Positions 857-20,465 of a stretch of 20,665 bases of DNA are shown here, in pieces. This stretch comes from Octopus sinensis (Eukaryota): the NCBI RefSeq assembly GCF_006345805.1, contig NW_021824019.1, positions 1 through 20,665 on the forward strand, given 5' to 3'. The translations under genes and the position numbers were made by a program. Positions within the stretch are counted from its first letter, which is position 1, and every line of letters starts with the position of its first letter. The notes under the pieces were generated by a model. That model made no database searches. It was not told the origin of the DNA and was given only the letters and a program-made list of their open reading frames with translations.

Positions 857-1408
857 AGATGCTACATGTTTGTTGGGGAAGGTGTTGGTAAAATAGTGTT
901 TCATGTCAGTCAGTAAAAGAAGGGGATGCTGCATGTCTGCCAGGGAAAAGGTGTGCTACATGGCTGCCAGTGAAAGGGTGTGCTACATGTCTAACAAAAA
1001 TTTAAAAAAAGCTCTGCTACATGTACACCAGTTGAAGGATGCGCTACATGTTTGTTCAGTGACAGTGTGTTCTACACGTTTGCCAGTGAAAAGTTGTGTT
1101 ACATAGCTGCTAATGAAAGGTTGTGCTACATGTCTGCCAACAACAACAACAAAAGTTGTGCTACATGTGTACCAGTTGAAGGATGTGCTACATGTTTGTT
1201 CAGTGACAGATTGTTCTGCATGTTTTCCAGCGAAGAAAGGTGTGCTACATGTTTGCCAGTGGAAAGAGTGTGCTACATGTTTGTTGGTGAAAGGAATGTT
1301 TGTTAGTGAAGGGAATGCTGCATGTCTGTCAGTGCAAATTAGCGCTACATGCTTGTTAATGATGAAAATGCAACATGTTTGGTAATGAAGTGGGTGCTAC
1401 ATGTTTAC
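857..1408. repeat. Degenerate ~27-bp minisatellite (core TGCTACATGT) with 143-144-bp higher-order period
   Basis: Core at 927, 954, 981, 1015, 1042, 1070, 1097, 1124, 1159 and onward. Offsets 927->1070, 954->1097 and 981->1124 are 143; 1015->1159 is 144. Confidence 0.9.
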
Positions 1409-2755: not shown

Positions 2756-4235
2756 TTAACCCTTTTGTTACTGTATTTATTTTGAGATGCTCTGTATTTC
2801 TTTCAATTAATTTTAAATATATCAAAGAATTTAGTAAAATAACTTCGTTATCATTCAGCCAGTGTTAGGAACATAAATTGTGACTAAGGTTTGGTGGAAG
2901 AATTTAATTCAAAACTTTTGAAAACAAGACATTAGTATTACAGAACCAGAGCAGGTTTCAGCTGGGTTGGTATCAAAACGGTTAAGAATTGTTTCTCTAT
3001 TATATATTTTAACTCTTTTGTTACCATATTGCTGTTGAGATGCTCTGTGTTTCTTTTAATTAATTTTAAATTTAACAAAGAATTTAGTAAAATAACTTAG
3101 TTATCATTAAGCTAGTGTTAAGAACATAAATTGTGACTAAGGTTTGGTAGAAGACTTTAATTCAAAACTTATGGAAACAAGACATTTGTACTACAGAGCC
3201 AGAGGCACTTTCAGCCGGGTTGGCATCAAAAGGGTTAAGAATTGTTTCTCTATTATATATTTTAACCCTTTTGTTACCATATTGCTGTTGAGATGCTCTG
3301 TGTTTCTTTCAATTAATTTTAAATATAACAAAGAATTTAGTAAAATAACTTGGTTATCATAGAGATAGTGTTAGGAACATAAATTGTGACTAAGGTTTGG
3401 TGGAAGATTTTAATTCAAAACTTTTGAAAACAAGACATTTGTACTACAGAGCCAGAAGTGGTTTCAGCCAGGTTGGTATCAAAAGGGTTAAGAATTGTTT
3501 CTCTATTATATATTTTAACCCTTTTGTTACCATATTGCTGTTGAGATGCTCTGTGTTTCTTTTAATTAATTTTAAATTTAACAAATAATTTAGTAAAATA
3601 ACTTAGTTATCGTTAAGCTAGTGTTAAGAACATAAATTGTGACTAAGGTTTGGTAGAAGACTTTAATTCAAAACTTATGGAAACAAGACATTTGTACTAC
3701 AGAGCCAGAGGCACTTTCAGCCGGGTTGGCATCAAAAGGGTTAAGAATTGTTTCTCTATTATATATTTTAACTCTTTTGTTACCATATTGCTGTTGAGAT
3801 GCTCTGTGTTTCTTTCAATTAATTTTAAATATAACAAAGAATTTAGTAAAATAACTTGGTTATCATAGAGATAGTGTTAGGAAAATAAATTGTGACTAAG
3901 GTTTGGTGGAAGATTTTAATTCAAAACTTATGGAAACAAGACATTTGTACTACAGAGCCAGAAGTGGTTTCAGCCAGGTTGGTATCAAAAGGGTTAAGAA
4001 TTGTTTCTTTATTAATTATTTTAACCCTTTTGTTGAGATGCTCTGTGTTTCTTTCAGTTACTTTAAATATAACAAAGAATTTAGTAAAATAACTTGGTTA
4101 TCATTCAGTTAGTGTTAAGAACATAAATTGTGACTAAGGTTTGGTGGAAGATTTTAATTCAAAACTTATGGAAACAAGACATTTGTACTACAGAGCCAGA
4201 AGTGGTTTTAGTGGGTTTGATAATGAAAGGGTTCA
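2756..4235. mobile_element. Tandem array of six piggyBac-type MITEs (222 bp) separated by 23-bp spacers; period 253 bp
   Basis: Copies at 2760-2981, 3013-3234, 3266-3487, 3519-3740, 3772-3993 and 4025-4231. Each is bounded by TTAA (last right flank TTCA). TIR CCCTTTTGTTACCA / TGGTATCAAAAGGG matches 13/14. TTAA flanks plus CCC...GGG ends are the piggyBac signature (established). Confidence 0.88.
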
Positions 4236-4371
4236 GAAGGTGAGCTGGCAGAACTGGCGGCACATGAAGCCAAATGCTTAGTGACATTTTGTCCATCTTT
4301 ACATTGAGTTCAAATTCTACCAAAATCAACTTTGTCTTTTACCCTTTTGGGGGGTCAATGAAATAAATACC

Positions 4372-4889
4372 TATTTCTTTACTACGCACAAGGGGCTAAA
4401 CACAGAGGGGACAAACAAGGACAGACAAATGGATTAAGTTGTTTATATCGACCCCAGTGCATAACTGGTACTTATTTAACCCCTTACCCAACAATTATTT
4501 TGAAAATAAATGTATTTTTTCAGACATATTTTTTAATTGTTTTATTTTACTATGTTTTGAATGGTGATTTCGAGGTATATTTCAAACCTTTATTATGAAT
4601 TTTAATTCAATAATATTGATTTTAAATTACGGCATTGGGCAGTAATGAGTTAACCCGTTTTTAGACGAAGGAACTCGTTTGCTGTCGATTTTGGCGAGTC
4701 TATCTTTTGACGAGTTAACTCGCCAGAGATAGAAAAAAACGATTTCGGTCAAAACGCATATATTCGTTTCTGCCGGGTAAGGGGTTAATCGACCCTGATA
4801 GGATGAAAGGCAAAGTTGACCTTGGCGGAATTTGAACTCAGAATGTGGCAGCAGACGAAATACTGCTAAGCATTTCGCCCGGCGTGCTG
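4372..4889 (-). mobile_element. SINE family A, minus strand, interrupted by a MITE
   Basis: Colinear with 17225-17460 and 9629-9831 once 4480-4788 is removed. Confidence 0.9.
4480..4784. mobile_element. 305-bp piggyBac-type MITE (second family)
   Basis: TTAA at 4476-4479 and 4785-4788. Perfect 10-bp TIR CCCCTTACCC / GGGTAAGGGG. The empty site CTTAT-TTAA-TCGACCC is visible in the uninterrupted SINE copy at ~9716-9731. Confidence 0.92.
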
Positions 4890-5446
4890 TTTCTCACTGG
4901 GATTGGTGTCACTGATTTACCTCCTCTACCTGAAATTGCAGACATTGTGCCAAAATTTGAATCCATTGATGGCAACATTGGTGGCACTCACATAGATGAA
5001 CCCACTGACGGCACAGAAACTCATAGCAACAAACCAGATCATTGATGACAACGAAGCAACCGTTTGATGACAAAACACCAACCAGTGACAGAAATATATC
5101 CAGATCATTGATAGCAGACACCAATGTACAGACAGCACTTCTGCCCCTTGGTGGCAATTTGAGGGCAATATATCAACTCATTTGCCTCTCCTTTTTTTAT
5201 AAAAAAAATTATAAGAACAGCACAAACAAGAAGAATATGGTAGAATACAGTCCAAAACAATTCCCTGGCAACTGACAGCAAATTGTGTTTCCTTTGTCTT
5301 GGAGACATGTTTCCTAAGATAATTGAAGCTTTATTAAAAGACATGTTTGTCTCCTCCACCACCGACCAACTCCCACCCCCACCCCAGAAGACTAGTTTAT
5401 TATTGTTCATTCACTTGCTGTGGTCTTTTGTGTTTTTTTCCCCATT

Positions 5447-8332: not shown

Positions 8333-9188
8333 ATATAAATTGTCACCATTTCATATTAATTTCATGCATGTGCATTGTTTGTTTTTAATTTTGTCGACAA
8401 CACAATATAGTAGGGTCAGTTGGGCACCGTCTGTGAGAAAAACAACACTATGACACAATTCACTCAGCCTGAAATTCAGAAACGACATGCTGTGCTGCTT
8501 TGCATTCATGCCAGAAGCTCCAATAAGAACCTTTCAGTGTGTTTGGGTGTCAATCTGAGGACATGTTCTGAGAGTGATAAAAATCAAACATCCAATCAAC
8601 ATCATAGTGTTTGGAGTGATCACTAAAGATAGCAATACTATGCCTCCATTCATCTTTCTACATGGCCTCAGACTCAACATGGAGGCCTACATCAAGTGCC
8701 TGGAGGAAGTAGTGCTGCCCTGGTTCAAGACAGCAGCTGCTGGAAAGCCGTATGTCTAGCAACACAACTCTGTACCATGCCACAAAAGCAGGAGAACTCA
8801 CTCATAGTGTCAGACAATATCTGTGACCACATCACCCCTAACATCTGGCCACCTAACTCCCTACAATGCAACCCCCTTGATTATTGTGTGGGGCGCACTT
8901 GAGCAAGAGACCAGCAAAACTTCTCATAACACCAAAGATGACCTGCAGGAAAGGATTATGGCAGCATTCACCAACTTAAACGAGGAGACCGTCCAGAAGA
9001 GTTGCAGAAGATTCTGAAGTCGTCTGAAGGCCGTGGTTGAAACCAATGGAGATTTTATCGAATAAATTTACTCTTTAAAATTTCAAGATATTTCGATGTA
9101 ATTATGGTAAATATATCTATTAAAATGAAATGTAAGTGTTATTTTCATTTCTGCATAATTCAGATGACAATATATTCACCACACCCTG
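8333..9188 (+). mobile_element. Internally deleted Tc1/mariner element, maT (DD37D)-like transposase pseudogene
   Basis: ATG 8450. After a deletion: KHPINIIVFGVIT...MPPFIF...LPW...GKPYV*QHNSVPCH...WPPNSLQCNPLDY..VWGALE...RF*SRLKAVVETNGDFIE* (stop 9063-9065). Right TIR ends CACACCCTG followed by TA (9189-9190). Left TIR remnant AAATTGTCACC. Stops and frameshifts are present. Confidence 0.88.
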
Positions 9189-9499: not shown

Positions 9500-9869
9500 A
9501 TATACAACGGGCTTCTTCCAGTTTCTGTCTACCAAATCCTGAGGCAATAGTAGAAGACACTTGGCCAAGGTGCCATGCAGTGGGCCTGAACCCAGGACTA
9601 TGTGGTTGGTAAGCAAGCAAGCTACTTATTTCTTTACTGCCCACAAGGGGCTACAAACAAAGGGGACAAACAAACAGATTAAGTTGATTATATCGACCCC
9701 AGTGCGTAACTGGTACTTATTTAATCGACCCCAAAAGGATGAAAGGCAAAGTCAGAATGTAGCAGCAGATGAAATACCACAAAGCATTTTGCCCGGTGTT
9801 CTAACATTTTTGCCAGCTTGCCGCCCTAAGTAGCAAGCAAGCTACTTACCACACAGCCACTCCTGCACC
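9236..9869 (-). mobile_element. SINE family B, minus strand, interrupted by SINE A
   Basis: Colinear with 12440-12839. Central (TA)n. CORE-like GCACCTTGGCCAAGTGTCTT on the minus strand. Confidence 0.9.
9629..9831 (-). mobile_element. SINE family A nested in the SINE B head, 17-bp TSD
   Basis: AGCAAGCAAGCTACTTA at 9612-9628 and 9832-9848. Confidence 0.9.
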
Positions 9870-9921: not shown

Positions 9922-10706
9922 ATTTAGCAATTAAGGACAACTACTTAATAAGGAAAACTTAACAAGAAATTGTCATAAGAGAAAAATTTCGAAAATAATT
10001 ATTTCTTATTCAACATATAATTTATATATAGAGGGTATTATACATCCATGCCAGATGGCATTATACATACATGCCACACGCTAAGAGGGACATTTAGTCA
10101 TTTCTACCAAAATATTACTAATCCCACCGAATGCAATTTTTCAAAGTAAGACATTTAAAAAATATTAGTAATATTTTTGGTAGAAATGACTAAATGTCCC
10201 TCTTAGCGTGTGGCATGTATGTATAATGCCATCTGGCATGGATGTATAATGCCCTCTATATATAAATTAATATGTTGAATAAGAAAAATTATTTTCAAAA
10301 TTTTTTCTCTTATGAGGTTTTCACGCTATCTACCTGACAATTTCTTGTTAAGTTTTCCTTATTAAGTAGTTGTCCTAATTGCTAAATTTTTATTCCGAAA
10401 AAACTTTCCTTTCCCGAAATGCAATTCGTAAAAGTCCGCATTTACAGGATGTAATATATGTAAACTCACCCATGTGCTTCGTTGATGTTGATCAGTTAGC
10501 TGATCGGCTTAAGCGAGGCAGGGTCGTTTATGTATGATACATCCAGGCCTGCTGATGAATACGTAAGTATGAAATCACTGTGATACAGGTTATATATTTT
10601 TTAAATGTCTTACTTTGAAAAATTGCATTCGGTGGGATTAGTATATTTTTGGTAGAAATGACTAAATGTCCCTCTTTAGGTGTGGCATGTATGTATAATG
10701 CCATCT
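9922..10706 (+). mobile_element. Penelope-like / retrozyme-like non-coding element: ~472-bp unit with 70-bp direct repeats plus an inverted partial copy, in (TA)n
   Basis: Direct repeats at 10164-10234 and 10637-10706 (offset 472-473). Segment 9922-10165 is an inverted copy spanning the unit junction. Hammerhead motif at 10546-10591. (TA)n on both flanks. The family assignment is an inference from this architecture. Confidence 0.7.
10546..10591 (+). ncRNA. Minimal type I hammerhead ribozyme
   Basis: Stem I GCCTG(10547-51)/CAGGT(10586-90). Core CTGATGA 10552-58. Stem II ATAC/GTAT with a GTAA loop. GAAA 10571-74. Stem III ATCAC-T-GTGAT. Cleavage triplet AUA, with the cut predicted after A10585. 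Confidence 0.85.
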
Positions 10707-14541: not shown

Positions 14542-14792
14542 TTCAGTATGGAGCAAATAACTCCATACTGAAGTAAGGGAGATAATTCTTATTAACATTT
14601 AAAAGTTCTTAAAAGGTATTTTCTATTGTTTATAATAATAATAAATCAGGAGATGCCAGAAGTGAATGCATGATGGGAAAAGTCTAATTATTTTTTAATT
14701 AAAAAATTAGACTTTTCCCATGATACACTCACTTCTGGCTTCTCTTGATTTATTATTATTATAAATAATAGAAAATACCTTTTAAGAACTTT
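14542..14792. repeat. Double foldback: 12-bp hairpin (14542-14572) and 191-bp loopless palindrome (14602-14792)
   Basis: TTCAGTATGGAG/CTCCATACTGAA. The long arms are centred on TTTTTTAA|TTAAAAAA with about 6 substitutions and one 3-nt bulge. Confidence 0.92.
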
Positions 14793-17224: not shown

Positions 17225-17463
17225 TATTTCTTTACTACCCACAAGGGGCTAAACACAGAGGGGACAAACAATGACAGGCAAATGGATTAAGTCAATTATA
17301 TTGATCCCAGTGCATAACTGGTACTTATTTTAATTGATTCCGAAAAGTTGAAAGGCAAAGTCGACCTCGGCAGAATTTGAACTCAGAACGTAGTGGCAGA
17401 CGAAATACCGCTAAGCATTTCACCCAGCGTGGTAACGTTTCTGCCAGCTCACCGCCTTTCAAT
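17225..17463 (-). mobile_element. Full-length SINE family A with a 15-bp TSD
   Basis: TTGATATAATCAACC at 17210-17224 and 17464-17478. Confidence 0.92.
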
Positions 17464-17908: not shown

Positions 17909-18397
17909 TTTGATCTCCAAATTAAACACCTTGAAAATCCTTGTCCACCACAATAAGTGGACGGATGCAGCAAATGGCTCTTCGCATATTTATTTTCTAA
18001 ATGGCATTCAGTCAGTTCATTGCAATTATTTCAAAACTCGCATATTTTTACAAACCTCTCGCCGCCACCCCACACTTCCCCCGCCCCCCACATCCTCCAG
18101 CTTTAGAACTTCTGCTCTCAACTATATTCCAACAATATGTTTACAATTGCCCCATTATTCCAATGGAATAATAATATTCAAACATTTCTATTATATATAT
18201 ATTACATTACATTATTAACAAAGACATCATACTTGCCGGCGCTGAAAAGGTAAAAGGAAAAACAAAAAACAAAAACAAATGGCAAACACATTCTCTGGAA
18301 TTATATAAATAGGTCCATTCGTGCTAAAGCTAGCTAGCTTTTTAATTCTACAATTATGTTATAAATGGTTTCCATTTTTGCATAATTTGAGACATAA

Positions 18398-18890
18398 ATG
18401 GAATTTCAAAGACAAAAGTAAAAGTGTAAAGACAGATGTATAATGCTTTTGAAGGTTTAGACTTAAGCATCTTGATGGTGCAGGTAATAAAGTTCTGGTG
18501 AACTATTGTATTCAGGTGTGTGTGTGTGTGGGTGGGAGGAGAGAGAAAGAGAGGACGAAATACATGAAATTACATATGTGTGTGTGTGTGTGTGTGCACC
18601 TATAATATAATTATATATATATGTATACATTATATATAATATATATATATATATATATAGTATACAATTATATAATATATTATATATATATAGGTGCACA
18701 CACACACACAAATATGTAATTTCATGTATTTCGTCTCTCTTTCTCTCTCTCTCCCACCCACACACACACACACCTGAATACAATAGTTCACCAGAACTTT
18801 ATTACCTGCACATCAAGATGCTTAAGTCTAAACCTTCAAAAGCATTATACATCTGTCTTTACACTTTTACTTTTGTCTTTGAAATTCCAT
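18398..18890. repeat. ~490-bp inverted duplication centred on an AT microsatellite
   Basis: Arms of about 200 bp (18398-18604 and 18689-18890). The outer 80 bp are identical; the remaining differences are essentially indels in or next to simple repeats. Confidence 0.95.
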
Positions 18891-18943
18891 ATATATATAT
18901 AGGTGTGAGTGTGCATGTTTCTGCATGTATTTGTGTACATATA

Positions 18944-19816: not shown

Positions 19817-20389
19817 TAGTACAGCTTCGTCGAGGAAAGAAGCACTACCGACACTATTTTCATAGTCAGGCAATGGCAAGAGAAGTACCTAGCTAAGAAT
19901 AAACCATTTCACCTAGCATTCGATGATCTAGAGAAACCCTTCGATAGAGTGCCCCCCACTGTGGGATATGGTGGGCTCTGAGGCTATGTACAAATATGCT
20001 GTCAGTAAGGTGAGAGTTAACCACAAGTACAGTGAAGAATTTGGTGTTCATCAAGGCTCATTCTTCAGTCCCCTCCTTTTCACCATTGTCCTCCAGACCA
20101 TAACAAAGGAATTCTAGACCTCAGCCACAGGGAGCTACTATGTGCTGATAATCTTGCCCTCATAACAGATTCTATATCAGAGCTAGATGAAAATTTCCAG
20201 GTGTGGAAGCAAAAACTGGAATCTAAGGGCCTTAAGGTTAACTTAGCAAAGACTAAGGTCCTAATAAGCAATAAAACAGACAGGACCCTAACCTTCCTTA
20301 GGTGGCACTGTTTGATTTGTAGGAAACGTGTAGGCAGGAACTCCATTTGGTGTACCCAATGTAAGCTACAGACACACGAAAGGTGCAGT
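19817..20389 (+). pseudogene. RTE LINE reverse-transcriptase fragment with a downstream Cys-rich motif
   Basis: STTDTIFIVRQWQEKYLAKNKPFHLAFDDLEKPFDRVP...GVHQGSFFSPLLF...LLCADNLALI (decayed YADD)...LKVNLAKTKVL...WHCLICRKRVGRNSIWCTQCKLQTHERCS. Stops, frameshifts and deletions are present. Confidence 0.9.
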
Positions 20390-20465
20390 ATGTTTTCTAT
20401 TATTTTGCAACCTTCCAACATGTAGATTCATATATAAATATCTAGTGAATATACGTACATTTAGT

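What the first reader, a model, noticed from the sequence alone, without database searches (positions are those of the whole stretch)
2756..4235. A 253-bp satellite built from intact piggyBac MITEs and a fixed 23-bp spacer
Seen: unit = 222-bp MITE + TTAA + GAATTGTTTCTCTATTATATATT + TTAA, giving six MITEs and five spacers. The spacer matches neither outer flank beyond GAA, so this is not a simple MITE-plus-flank duplication. Copies 1 and 6 are the most divergent. Inference: two MITEs landed in TTAA sites 23 bp apart and unequal exchange between them amplified the unit, a transposon-to-satellite transition. Every copy keeps TTAA and recognisable TIRs (some with terminal substitutions), so a left end and any downstream right end could act as a composite piggyBac substrate and move spacers. 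Alternatively MITE-spacer-MITE is itself a mobile unit.
Basis: partly seen in the sequence, partly recalled or inferred. Interest (0 to 1): 0.75.

Follow-up and report, generated by a model that had tools for sequence, protein, structure and literature searches.

The report
Small tandem array of piggyBac-type MITEs
A 1.5-kb stretch of an octopus-like genome holds six head-to-tail copies of a small TTAA-flanked transposon separated by one repeated 23-base spacer, which is an ordinary, already-described way for neighbouring transposon insertions to be multiplied into a short tandem repeat.

Summary
The array is real. It runs 2756-4235 with a 253-bp period: six 222-bp elements (the last is 207 bp) and five 23-bp spacers, each bounded by TTAA. 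The element has the piggyBac/TTAA MITE hallmarks: a 13-14-bp terminal inverted repeat, CCCTTTTGTTACC...GGTATCAAAAGGG, that 0 of 100,000 shuffles reach.

- The outermost right site is TTCA, not TTAA.
- Spacer 5 has 3 substitutions.
- Copy 6 lacks 14 bp of its left end.
- Three of the 12 ends have lost the CC[C/T]T tip.

Three new points:
- The array has a 506-bp higher-order structure. Copies 2/4 and 3/5 are 98.6% and 98.2% identical, while the two types differ by about 8%.
- Copy 6 matches the interior up to column 203 and then diverges sharply (permutation p<0.0002).
- A SINE begins 5 bp after copy 6.

Together these favour two nearby insertions followed by unequal exchange, with a recent dimer duplication. 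This is the published double-insertion route. Tandem arrays of full-size piggyBac MITEs with conserved gaps were reported in corals in 2010.

Dispersal of the family, target-site duplications and the empty site could not be tested because no octopus genome was searchable. One solitary distant relative was found in Octopus vulgaris. Nothing supports a mobile composite.

Verdict: new member of a known kind, low interest.

The parts
2756..2759 (+). Outer left TTAA, the putative target-site copy of the left founder element
2760..2981 (+). M1, 222 bp, the left edge copy. It is 87-90% identical to the others. Its 18 differences from all interior copies are spread along its length, and its 3' tip is CGG.
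2986..3008 (+). Spacer S1 (GAATTGTTTCTCTATTATATATT), bounded by TTAA 2982-2985 and TTAA 3009-3012
3013..3234 (+). M2, type A, 98.6% identical to M4. Its 5' tip is CTC.
3239..3261 (+). Spacer S2, identical to S1
3266..3487 (+). M3, type B, 98.2% identical to M5. It has the best-preserved inverted repeat, CCCTTTTGTTACCA / CCCTTTTGATACCA (14 nt, 1 mismatch).
3492..3514 (+). Spacer S3, identical to S1
3519..3740 (+). M4, type A
3745..3767 (+). Spacer S4, identical to S1
3772..3993 (+). M5, type B. Its 5' tip is CTC.
3998..4020 (+). Spacer S5 (GAATTGTTTCTTTATTAATTATT), 3 substitutions relative to S1-S4
4025..4231 (+). M6, 207 bp, the right edge copy. It has a 14-bp deletion between TGTT repeats. 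The body up to alignment column 203 is B-like, and the last about 20 bp are highly divergent.
4232..4235 (+). TTCA, the degenerate outer right TTAA
3009..4020 (+). Two 506-bp higher-order dimers (3009-3514 and 3515-4020) that differ at 10 of 506 positions. This is the most recent duplication.
4237..4372 (+). Context: the 5' part of an old SINE copy. Its consensus 5' end (AAGG[T/C]GGTGAGCTGGCAG) starts 5 bp after M6, which fixes the right boundary of the array.

Best explanation
Two copies of a 222-bp piggyBac/TTAA-type MITE inserted in the same orientation into TTAA sites 27 bp apart, in an AT-rich stretch just upstream of an older SINE. The 23 bp between the two sites became the spacer.

Unequal exchange (or replication template switching) between the right copy on one chromatid and the left copy on the other made a hybrid interior unit, with the crossover near the 3' end at about column 204. 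Further exchanges made units of element plus TTAA-spacer-TTAA, which drifted into two variants (A and B, about 8% apart). Most recently an A-B dimer of 506 bp was duplicated.

The array is a passive product of recombination. It has no indicated function, and the elements now look inactive.

Shown: the anatomy, the inverted repeat, the identical junctions, the higher-order repeat and the breakpoint in copy 6. Inferred: two independent insertions, the order of events and the inactivity.
For: 1. The unit has piggyBac-type ends. It has TTAA on both sides and a CCCT...AGGG inverted repeat of 13-14 nt, which 0 of 100,000 shuffles reach. The single-strand fold has z = -2.8.
2. The array starts and ends with an element, with no spacer outside M1 or M6. 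No spacer remnant occurs elsewhere in the window. A single element duplicated with its flank should leave a spacer at one end.
3. All junctions carry the same 31-bp TTAA-S-TTAA, so growth was by duplicating element plus spacer.
4. M6 differs from all interior copies at 4 of 184 sites up to column 203 and at 8 of 23 sites after it (max chi-square 39.8, permutation p<0.0002). M1 differs at 18 of 222 sites with no significant breakpoint. This is what is expected if interior units are right founder (5' part) plus left founder (3' tip).
5. M2/M4 are 98.6% identical and M3/M5 98.2%, against about 92% between types. The neighbour-joining tree gives (M2,M4),(M3,M5) with long M1 and M6 branches.
6. TTAA-specific insertion of this kind of element does occur in this genome. 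A second, unrelated 305-bp element (4480-4784, inverted repeat CCCCTTACCC) sits in a SINE with duplicated TTAA, and paralogous SINE copies show the single-TTAA empty site.
7. The route is documented elsewhere: the hobo and R1 arrays (PMC5932611) and coral CMITE arrays with conserved gaps (PMC2872659). piggyBac families are present and recently active in Octopus vulgaris (PMC13282606).
Against: No empty site, intermediate allele or second genome could be examined.

Dispersed copies of this exact family were not found. The only relative is one solitary copy at 68% identity over 137 bp, without recognisable inverted repeats, in a 20-kb O. vulgaris sample.

The 35% divergence of the M6 tip is much higher than the roughly 12% body divergence between M1 and the rest. 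It therefore needs either a very divergent right founder or a local mutation cluster.

Two same-orientation insertions within 27 bp are intrinsically rare.

M1's 3' part is not clearly closer to the interior than M6's, except in the last about 20 bp.
Confidence: 0.55

Rival explanations
1. A single MITE insertion was duplicated together with its 27-bp right flank. The duplication arose by slippage or microhomology-mediated tandem duplication between the TTAA left of the element and the TTAA after the spacer. The array then expanded, and the last spacer was later lost by a 27-bp deletion between its two TTAAs.
For: Identical spacers and TTAA microhomology lie at every junction. This is the mechanism the authors of the coral CMITE arrays favoured (PMC2872659). 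It needs only one transposition. A deletion between short repeats did occur in M6 (TGTT...TGTT).
Against: It needs an exact extra deletion to make the array end on an element. It does not predict the sharp breakpoint in M6, which is 2% divergent before column 203 and 35% after it, while M1 is evenly divergent. No spacer remnant lies beyond M6 or anywhere else in the window.
Confidence: 0.22
2. The element-spacer-element composite, or the whole array, formed elsewhere. It was then moved here as one unit by a piggyBac transposase using an outer left end and an outer right end. Equivalently, it belongs to a multi-locus family of such composites.
For: The array is bounded exactly by element termini and by TTAA / TTCA. 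The spacer matches neither flank. Nothing found here excludes other loci.
Against: No second copy of the junction or spacer was found in the window or in 20 kb of O. vulgaris. The outer ends are the most degraded parts of the array: M6's right inverted repeat has 4 of 13 mismatches, and its left end is deleted. Edge-specific divergence and the higher-order repeat point to in-place growth. There are no excision footprints (spacer-TTAA-spacer) inside the array.
Confidence: 0.08
3. The copy number is inflated or collapsed by assembly, so the true locus has fewer or more units.
For: M2/M4 and M3/M5 are 98-99% identical, and a 506-bp repeat can be mis-counted. No reads were available.
Against: At least four clearly different unit variants (M1, type A, type B, M6) and two spacer variants exist. 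The near-identical pairs still differ at 10 of 506 positions. An artefact can therefore change the count of dimers but cannot create the array.
Confidence: 0.08
4. The unit is not a transposon at all. It is a locus-specific tandem repeat whose monomer happens to carry an inverted repeat next to TTAA.
For: No dispersed copy with inverted repeats and target-site duplications was found. The one relative in O. vulgaris lacks recognisable inverted repeats.
Against: An inverted repeat of this length at the exact ends has probability below 1e-5. It starts CCCT, ends AGGG, and abuts TTAA on both sides, which is the piggyBac signature (PMC2872659). A solitary relative of the body does exist on an O. 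vulgaris chromosome.
Confidence: 0.05

Closest known systems
Tandem CMITE arrays in Acropora corals (Wang, Zhang, Meyer and Matz 2010, PLoS One 5:e10700; PMC2872659)
   Same: Full-size piggyBac/TTAA MITEs are repeated head to tail. Some arrays have gaps between the elements, and both the elements and the gaps are highly similar. Growth is inferred to be by DNA duplication rather than repeated transposition.
   Different: CMITEs are about 100 bp, come from cnidarians, and have an unusually conserved core. The authors favoured replication slippage. Here the unit is 222 bp in an octopus-like genome, the array ends on an element at both sides, and it shows a 506-bp higher-order repeat and an edge breakpoint that favour two founder insertions.
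Double insertion of transposable elements followed by unequal exchange (McGurk and Barbash 2018, Genome Res 28:714; PMC5932611). Examples are the hobo array of about 16 copies and the R1 array with identical 33-nt rDNA spacers.
   Same: Complete elements lie head to tail. An identical short piece of target DNA sits at every junction. There is a single locus, and expansion from a dimer by unequal exchange is inferred.
   Different: In those cases both insertions used the same target, so the junction is the target-site duplication (8 nt for hobo) or a site-specific 33 nt. Here two different TTAA sites 23 bp apart were used, the element is a non-autonomous MITE, and the host is a mollusc. Population data are lacking here.
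Xstir / T2-MITE-derived tandem repeats in Xenopus (Hikosaka and Kawahara 2004, as summarised in PMC12628747 and PMC2872659)
   Same: A TTAA-type MITE family gives rise to tandem arrays, as a transposon-to-tandem-repeat transition.
   Different: The Xenopus arrays are built from an internal part of the MITE. They are explained by stem-loop processing of neighbouring elements, and they occur at many loci. Here whole elements with both ends plus a foreign spacer are repeated at one known locus.
MITEs carrying internal tandem repeats (Xenopus miDNA4, clam DTC84, termite terMITEs; reviewed in PMC12628747)
   Same: There is an association of MITEs with short tandem arrays that can seed satellites.
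   Different: There the repeats lie inside one pair of inverted repeats. Here every unit has its own pair.

Membership tests
piggyBac/TTAA-superfamily MITE | Element flanked by TTAA, the target-site duplication of the superfamily | tested here: inconclusive
   TTAA abuts 11 of the 12 element ends and the twelfth is TTCA. Inside an array this does not prove duplication on insertion. No empty site was available for this family.
piggyBac/TTAA-superfamily MITE | Terminal inverted repeats of about 12-19 bp with a CC[C/T]T tip (definition as quoted in PMC2872659) | tested here: met
   The repeat is CCCTTTTGTTACC / CCCTTTTGATACC. In M3 it is 14 nt with 1 mismatch, and 0 of 100,000 shuffles reach that. 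The tip is kept at 9 of 12 ends.
piggyBac/TTAA-superfamily MITE | Small, non-coding, A+T-rich, homogeneous in size | tested here: met
   Five copies are 222 bp. G+C is about 30%. There are only short ORFs, with no protein homologues.
piggyBac/TTAA-superfamily MITE | Many dispersed copies in the genome | not testable with these tools
   No octopus genome was searchable. There were 0 hits in the metagenome, prokaryote-genome and viral collections. One solitary relative at 68% identity was found in 20 kb of O. vulgaris.
piggyBac/TTAA-superfamily MITE | An autonomous piggyBac-like partner with matching ends | not tested
   No transposase ORF lies in the window. The literature says only that piggyBac families exist in O. 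vulgaris.
Transposon tandem array made by double insertion and unequal exchange | Complete elements head to tail with identical target-derived sequence at every junction | tested here: met
   All five junctions are TTAA-23 bp-TTAA. Four spacers are identical and one has 3 substitutions.
Transposon tandem array made by double insertion and unequal exchange | Junction sequence is native DNA of the insertion locus (the spacer is present in the empty site) | not testable with these tools
   No orthologous or allelic empty site could be fetched.
Transposon tandem array made by double insertion and unequal exchange | Signs of unequal exchange: divergent edge units, homogenised interior, higher-order repeats | tested here: met
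Satellite DNA in the usual sense | Long arrays or high genomic abundance of the monomer | tested here: not met
   There are six units (1.48 kb) at the only known locus. Genome-wide abundance is unknown. 'Proto-satellite' or short tandem array is the accurate term.

The most novel reading that the evidence does not exclude
The element-spacer-element module is itself mobilised by a piggyBac transposase through alternative pairing of left and right ends. The same 36-nt junction would then be found at many loci, and short arrays would be seeded around the octopus genome, giving a transposition-driven route for spreading a nascent satellite.
Probability: 0.06. Interest if true: 0.6.

Novelty: new member of a known kind. 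Interest (0 to 1): 0.22.

Why it matters
It is a clean, small, fully readable example of the step from dispersed transposon to tandem repeat. Both founder edges are still visible, as are a recombination breakpoint and a recent dimer duplication.

It adds a mollusc case to a process documented in flies, corals and frogs. It could serve as a marker locus for copy-number change in steps of 253 or 506 bp in octopus populations.

It does not open a new question. Nothing suggests a function, and the mechanism is the published one.

Tried and rejected
1. Exact-pattern scans with two conserved element blocks found nothing in metagenome contigs, prokaryote genome contigs or viral contigs (first block only). 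These collections evidently hold no octopus DNA.

2. I tried using the 72-aa ORF that crosses a junction as a handle to find other copies among predicted proteins. There was no homologue, not even a self-match. Ten window ORFs are not in the protein collection, so the source contig cannot be reached that way.

3. I tried to reach octopus DNA through transposon-remnant proteins. Only one O. vulgaris locus (L002) and one O. bimaculoides locus (L003) were obtained. L002 shares the window's repeats and L003 shares few. One look-up found nothing on record, and the ENA contigs (L001, L004-L007) share little or nothing with the window. In all, 20 kb of useful sequence was gained.

4. A spacer remnant downstream of the SINE would support duplication of a single insertion followed by a SINE hit. 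None was found at 3 or fewer mismatches. A SINE target-site copy of the M6 end downstream was also absent.

5. I looked for a truncated 'unit 0' in the left flank. GCTGGCTTGTATCAAAA (2727-2743) resembles the M1 3' end, but 45 of 3000 shuffles do as well. Against the other units the flank is not significant, so I rejected it as evidence.

6. I tested whether the spacer is under constraint. Zero variable sites in S1-S4 gives P=0.02, but P=0.5 once S5 is included. No case can be made.

7. I tested whether the spacer derives from the element. S5 (but not S1-S4) resembles element positions 35-57, including an internal TTAA (14 of 3000 shuffles). This is left as an unexplained curiosity, because no model built on it fits the edges.

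8. Searching papers for the inverted-repeat strings returned only unrelated PCR primers.

9. Rfam and tRNA scans of the window found nothing.

Full report
**Observation**

The window is eukaryotic and full of microsatellites, SINE copies and transposon remnants. Tandem Repeats Finder reports an array at 2756-4202 with period 253, 5.8 copies, 90% matches and score 2332.

Reading the sequence and listing every TTAA gives this layout:
- TTAA-M1(2760-2981)
- TTAA-S1(2986-3008)-TTAA-M2(3013-3234)
- TTAA-S2-TTAA-M3(3266-3487)
- TTAA-S3-TTAA-M4(3519-3740)
- TTAA-S4-TTAA-M5(3772-3993)
- TTAA-S5(3998-4020)-TTAA-M6(4025-4231)-TTCA(4232-4235)

M1-M5 are 222 bp. S1-S4 are identical and S5 has three substitutions. 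M6 is 207 bp because of a 14-bp deletion between two TGTT repeats and a 1-bp deletion. The right outer site is TTCA, not TTAA. No other copy of the element, its ends or the spacer exists in the window. It is overstated on four details: 'intact', 'fixed', 'every copy keeps TTAA', and the right junction.

**Is the unit a piggyBac-type MITE?**

Each unit begins CCCTTTTGTTACC and ends GGTATCAAAAGGG. In M3 the terminal inverted repeat is 14 nt with one mismatch, and none of 100,000 shuffles of M3 reaches it. The single strand folds better than shuffles (z = -2.8). The ends abut TTAA, the tip is CCCT, the unit is short, about 30% G+C and non-coding.

These are the hallmarks quoted for the piggyBac/TTAA superfamily: inverted repeats of 12-19 bp, a CC[C/T]T tip and a TTAA duplication (PMC2872659). 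Three of the 12 ends have lost the tip (M2 and M5 start CTC, M1 ends CGG), and M6's right repeat has four mismatches.

The defining feature I could not test is dispersal with target-site duplications. All sequence collections at hand lack octopus DNA.

Two indirect points help:
- A second, unrelated 305-bp element at 4480-4784 has the inverted repeat CCCCTTACCC and TTAA at 4476-4479 and 4785-4788. It sits inside a minus-strand SINE whose paralogues in the window read straight through a single TTAA (ACTTAT-TTAA-TCGACCC). TTAA-specific cut-and-paste insertion has therefore operated in this genome.
- A 20-kb sample of an Octopus vulgaris chromosome holds one solitary, non-tandem relative of the element body (L002:14264-14396, 68% over 137 bp, E about 1e-6). 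It has no recognisable ends.

**Host**

- A LINE remnant at 19.9-20.4 kb is 64% identical to an Octopus bimaculoides protein.
- A mariner-like remnant at about 8.35-8.95 kb is 72% identical to an O. vulgaris protein.
- The window's SINE is 85-93% identical to copies on O. vulgaris chromosome OX597814.1.
- The window shares 94 BLAST hits with that O. vulgaris locus against 9 for an O. bimaculoides locus.

The source is an Octopus, closer to O. vulgaris. A recent repeat annotation of O. vulgaris lists piggyBac families with recently active insertions, and it dates a DNA-transposon (TIR) expansion at Jukes-Cantor distance 0.09, about 25 My (PMC13282606).

**Internal structure of the array**

Pairwise identities show a higher-order repeat. 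M2/M4 are 98.6% identical and M3/M5 are 98.2%, whereas the two types are about 92% identical to each other, and M1 and M6 are 86-90% identical to everything. The two 506-bp dimers, 3009-3514 and 3515-4020, differ at 10 positions. Neighbour joining gives (M2,M4),(M3,M5) with long M1 and M6 branches.

A few sites (columns 6, 163 and 166) do not follow the dimer pattern, which suggests short conversion tracts or recurrent mutation.

The edges are informative. M6 differs from all four interior copies at 4 of 184 sites up to column 203, and at 8 of 23 sites after it (maximum chi-square 39.8; none of 5000 permutations reaches it). M1 differs at 18 of 222 sites with no significant breakpoint.

The spacers are not significantly more conserved than the elements. 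There is no spacer-TTAA-spacer junction, so there is no excision footprint.

**Flanks**

The right flank is a SINE. Five other copies (three in the window, two in O. vulgaris) define its 5' end as AAGG[T/C]GGTGAGCTGGCAG. It therefore starts at 4237, and only TTCAG separates it from M6.

This copy is only about 70% identical to the others, so it is probably older than the array. The 'GAA' shared by the spacer and the flank is one base plus two SINE bases.

No remainder of the spacer and no SINE target-site copy lie downstream. The left flank shows no significant similarity to the unit. A 17-nt resemblance to the M1 3' end is matched by 45 of 3000 shuffles.

**Mechanism**

Identical junctions mean the units were copied as element plus spacer by recombination or replication, not by repeated transposition. 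The question is how the first dimer arose.

A single element duplicated with its flank should leave a spacer outside one terminal element. None is present, so that model needs an extra exact 27-bp deletion. It also does not predict that M6 is interior-like for 90% of its length and then abruptly 35% divergent.

Two founder insertions 27 bp apart do predict that pattern. An unequal crossover between the right founder and the left founder makes interior units that carry the right founder's 5' part and the left founder's 3' tip. The left founder (M1) then differs throughout, and the right founder (M6) differs only beyond the crossover.

I therefore favour double insertion plus unequal exchange (0.55) over single-insertion duplication (0.22), transposition of a pre-formed composite (0.08), an assembly miscount (0.08) and a non-transposon repeat (0.05).

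With the published octopus calibration, the dimer duplication would be roughly 2 My old, the A/B split roughly 12 My and the M1 split roughly 18 My. These are rough inferences, not measurements.

**Comparison with what is known**

- Tandem arrays of full-size piggyBac/TTAA MITEs, some with conserved gaps between elements, were described in Acropora corals in 2010 (PMC2872659).
- The general route was shown in Drosophila: two insertions at or near one site, with a shared piece of target DNA at every junction, then expansion by unequal exchange. Examples are hobo (about 16 copies, identical 8-nt junction) and R1 (identical 33-nt junction) (PMC5932611). It is listed among standard mechanisms in a 2025 review (PMC12628747).
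- Xenopus Xstir arrays come from an internal part of a TTAA-type MITE and differ in that respect.

The present locus differs only in detail: two different TTAA sites 23 bp apart, an octopus host, and a visible founder breakpoint. It is a new member of a known kind. 'Satellite' is too strong for six units at one known locus.

**Verdict**

Interest is low (0.22). The decisive tests need an octopus genome: the genome-wide count of the junction and of solitary TTAA-flanked copies, the orthologous empty site, and spanning long reads.

Noticed in passing
window 4476-4788: A second, unrelated piggyBac-type MITE (305 bp, 4480-4784, perfect 10-bp inverted repeat CCCCTTACCC) with TTAA on both sides. It is inserted in a minus-strand SINE. 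Paralogous SINE copies (e.g. 9680-9765 and 17290-17375) read through a single TTAA, giving an in-window empty site.
   Followed up: yes
window 18394-18894: An almost perfect palindrome of about 500 bp. The repeat finder reports 84-nt arms that are 99% complementary. By eye the symmetry continues inward through mirrored (GT)n/(AC)n tracts to a (TA)n-rich centre, so the arms may be about 250 bp. It is either a very recent inverted duplication or a foldback artefact of sequencing or assembly.
   Followed up: partly
window 9985-10310 and 10594-10706: A hairpin-like element with 95-nt arms that are 99% complementary (10018-10112 / 10175-10269), set inside longer inverted flanks. A third copy of the arm lies 330 bp downstream. 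Each arm contains a 23-bp internal duplication.
   Followed up: partly
window 14602-14792: A 190-bp near-perfect palindrome (92-nt arms, 92% complementary, 7 nt between the arms). It looks like a foldback-type MITE.
   Followed up: no
window 3998-4020 versus element positions 35-57: Spacer S5, but not S1-S4, resembles an internal stretch of the element that ends at an internal TTAA (TGTTTCTT..TTAATT.ATTTTAA; 14 of 3000 shuffles score as well). All three S5-specific substitutions move it towards the element sequence. This may be a short conversion tract or chance in A+T-rich DNA.
   Followed up: partly
window 4237-4894: Two SINE copies lie tail to tail. A 5' part on the plus strand (4237-4372, only about 70% identical to other copies) abuts the 3' end of a minus-strand copy (4373-4894), which is itself split by the MITE at 4480-4784.
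   Followed up: partly
window about 8350-8950 (+): The C-terminal half of a Tc1/mariner-type DDE transposase with three in-frame stops. It is 72% identical to an Octopus vulgaris 'hypothetical predicted protein'.
   Followed up: partly
window 19930-20425 (+): A LINE reverse-transcriptase tail plus a cysteine-rich (PHD-like) C-terminus, frameshifted. The best hit is an Octopus bimaculoides protein at 64% identity.
   Followed up: partly
window 927-1406: A minisatellite of 27-28-bp units (TGCTACATGTCTGCCAG...) organised in a 144-bp higher-order period. A related fragment lies at 2604-2636, just left of the MITE array.
   Followed up: no
L002:14264-14396 (Octopus vulgaris OX597814.1): A solitary distant relative of the array's element body (68% over 137 bp), wedged between SINE-type repeats and without recognisable inverted repeats. 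It hints at an older, dispersed family.
   Followed up: partly
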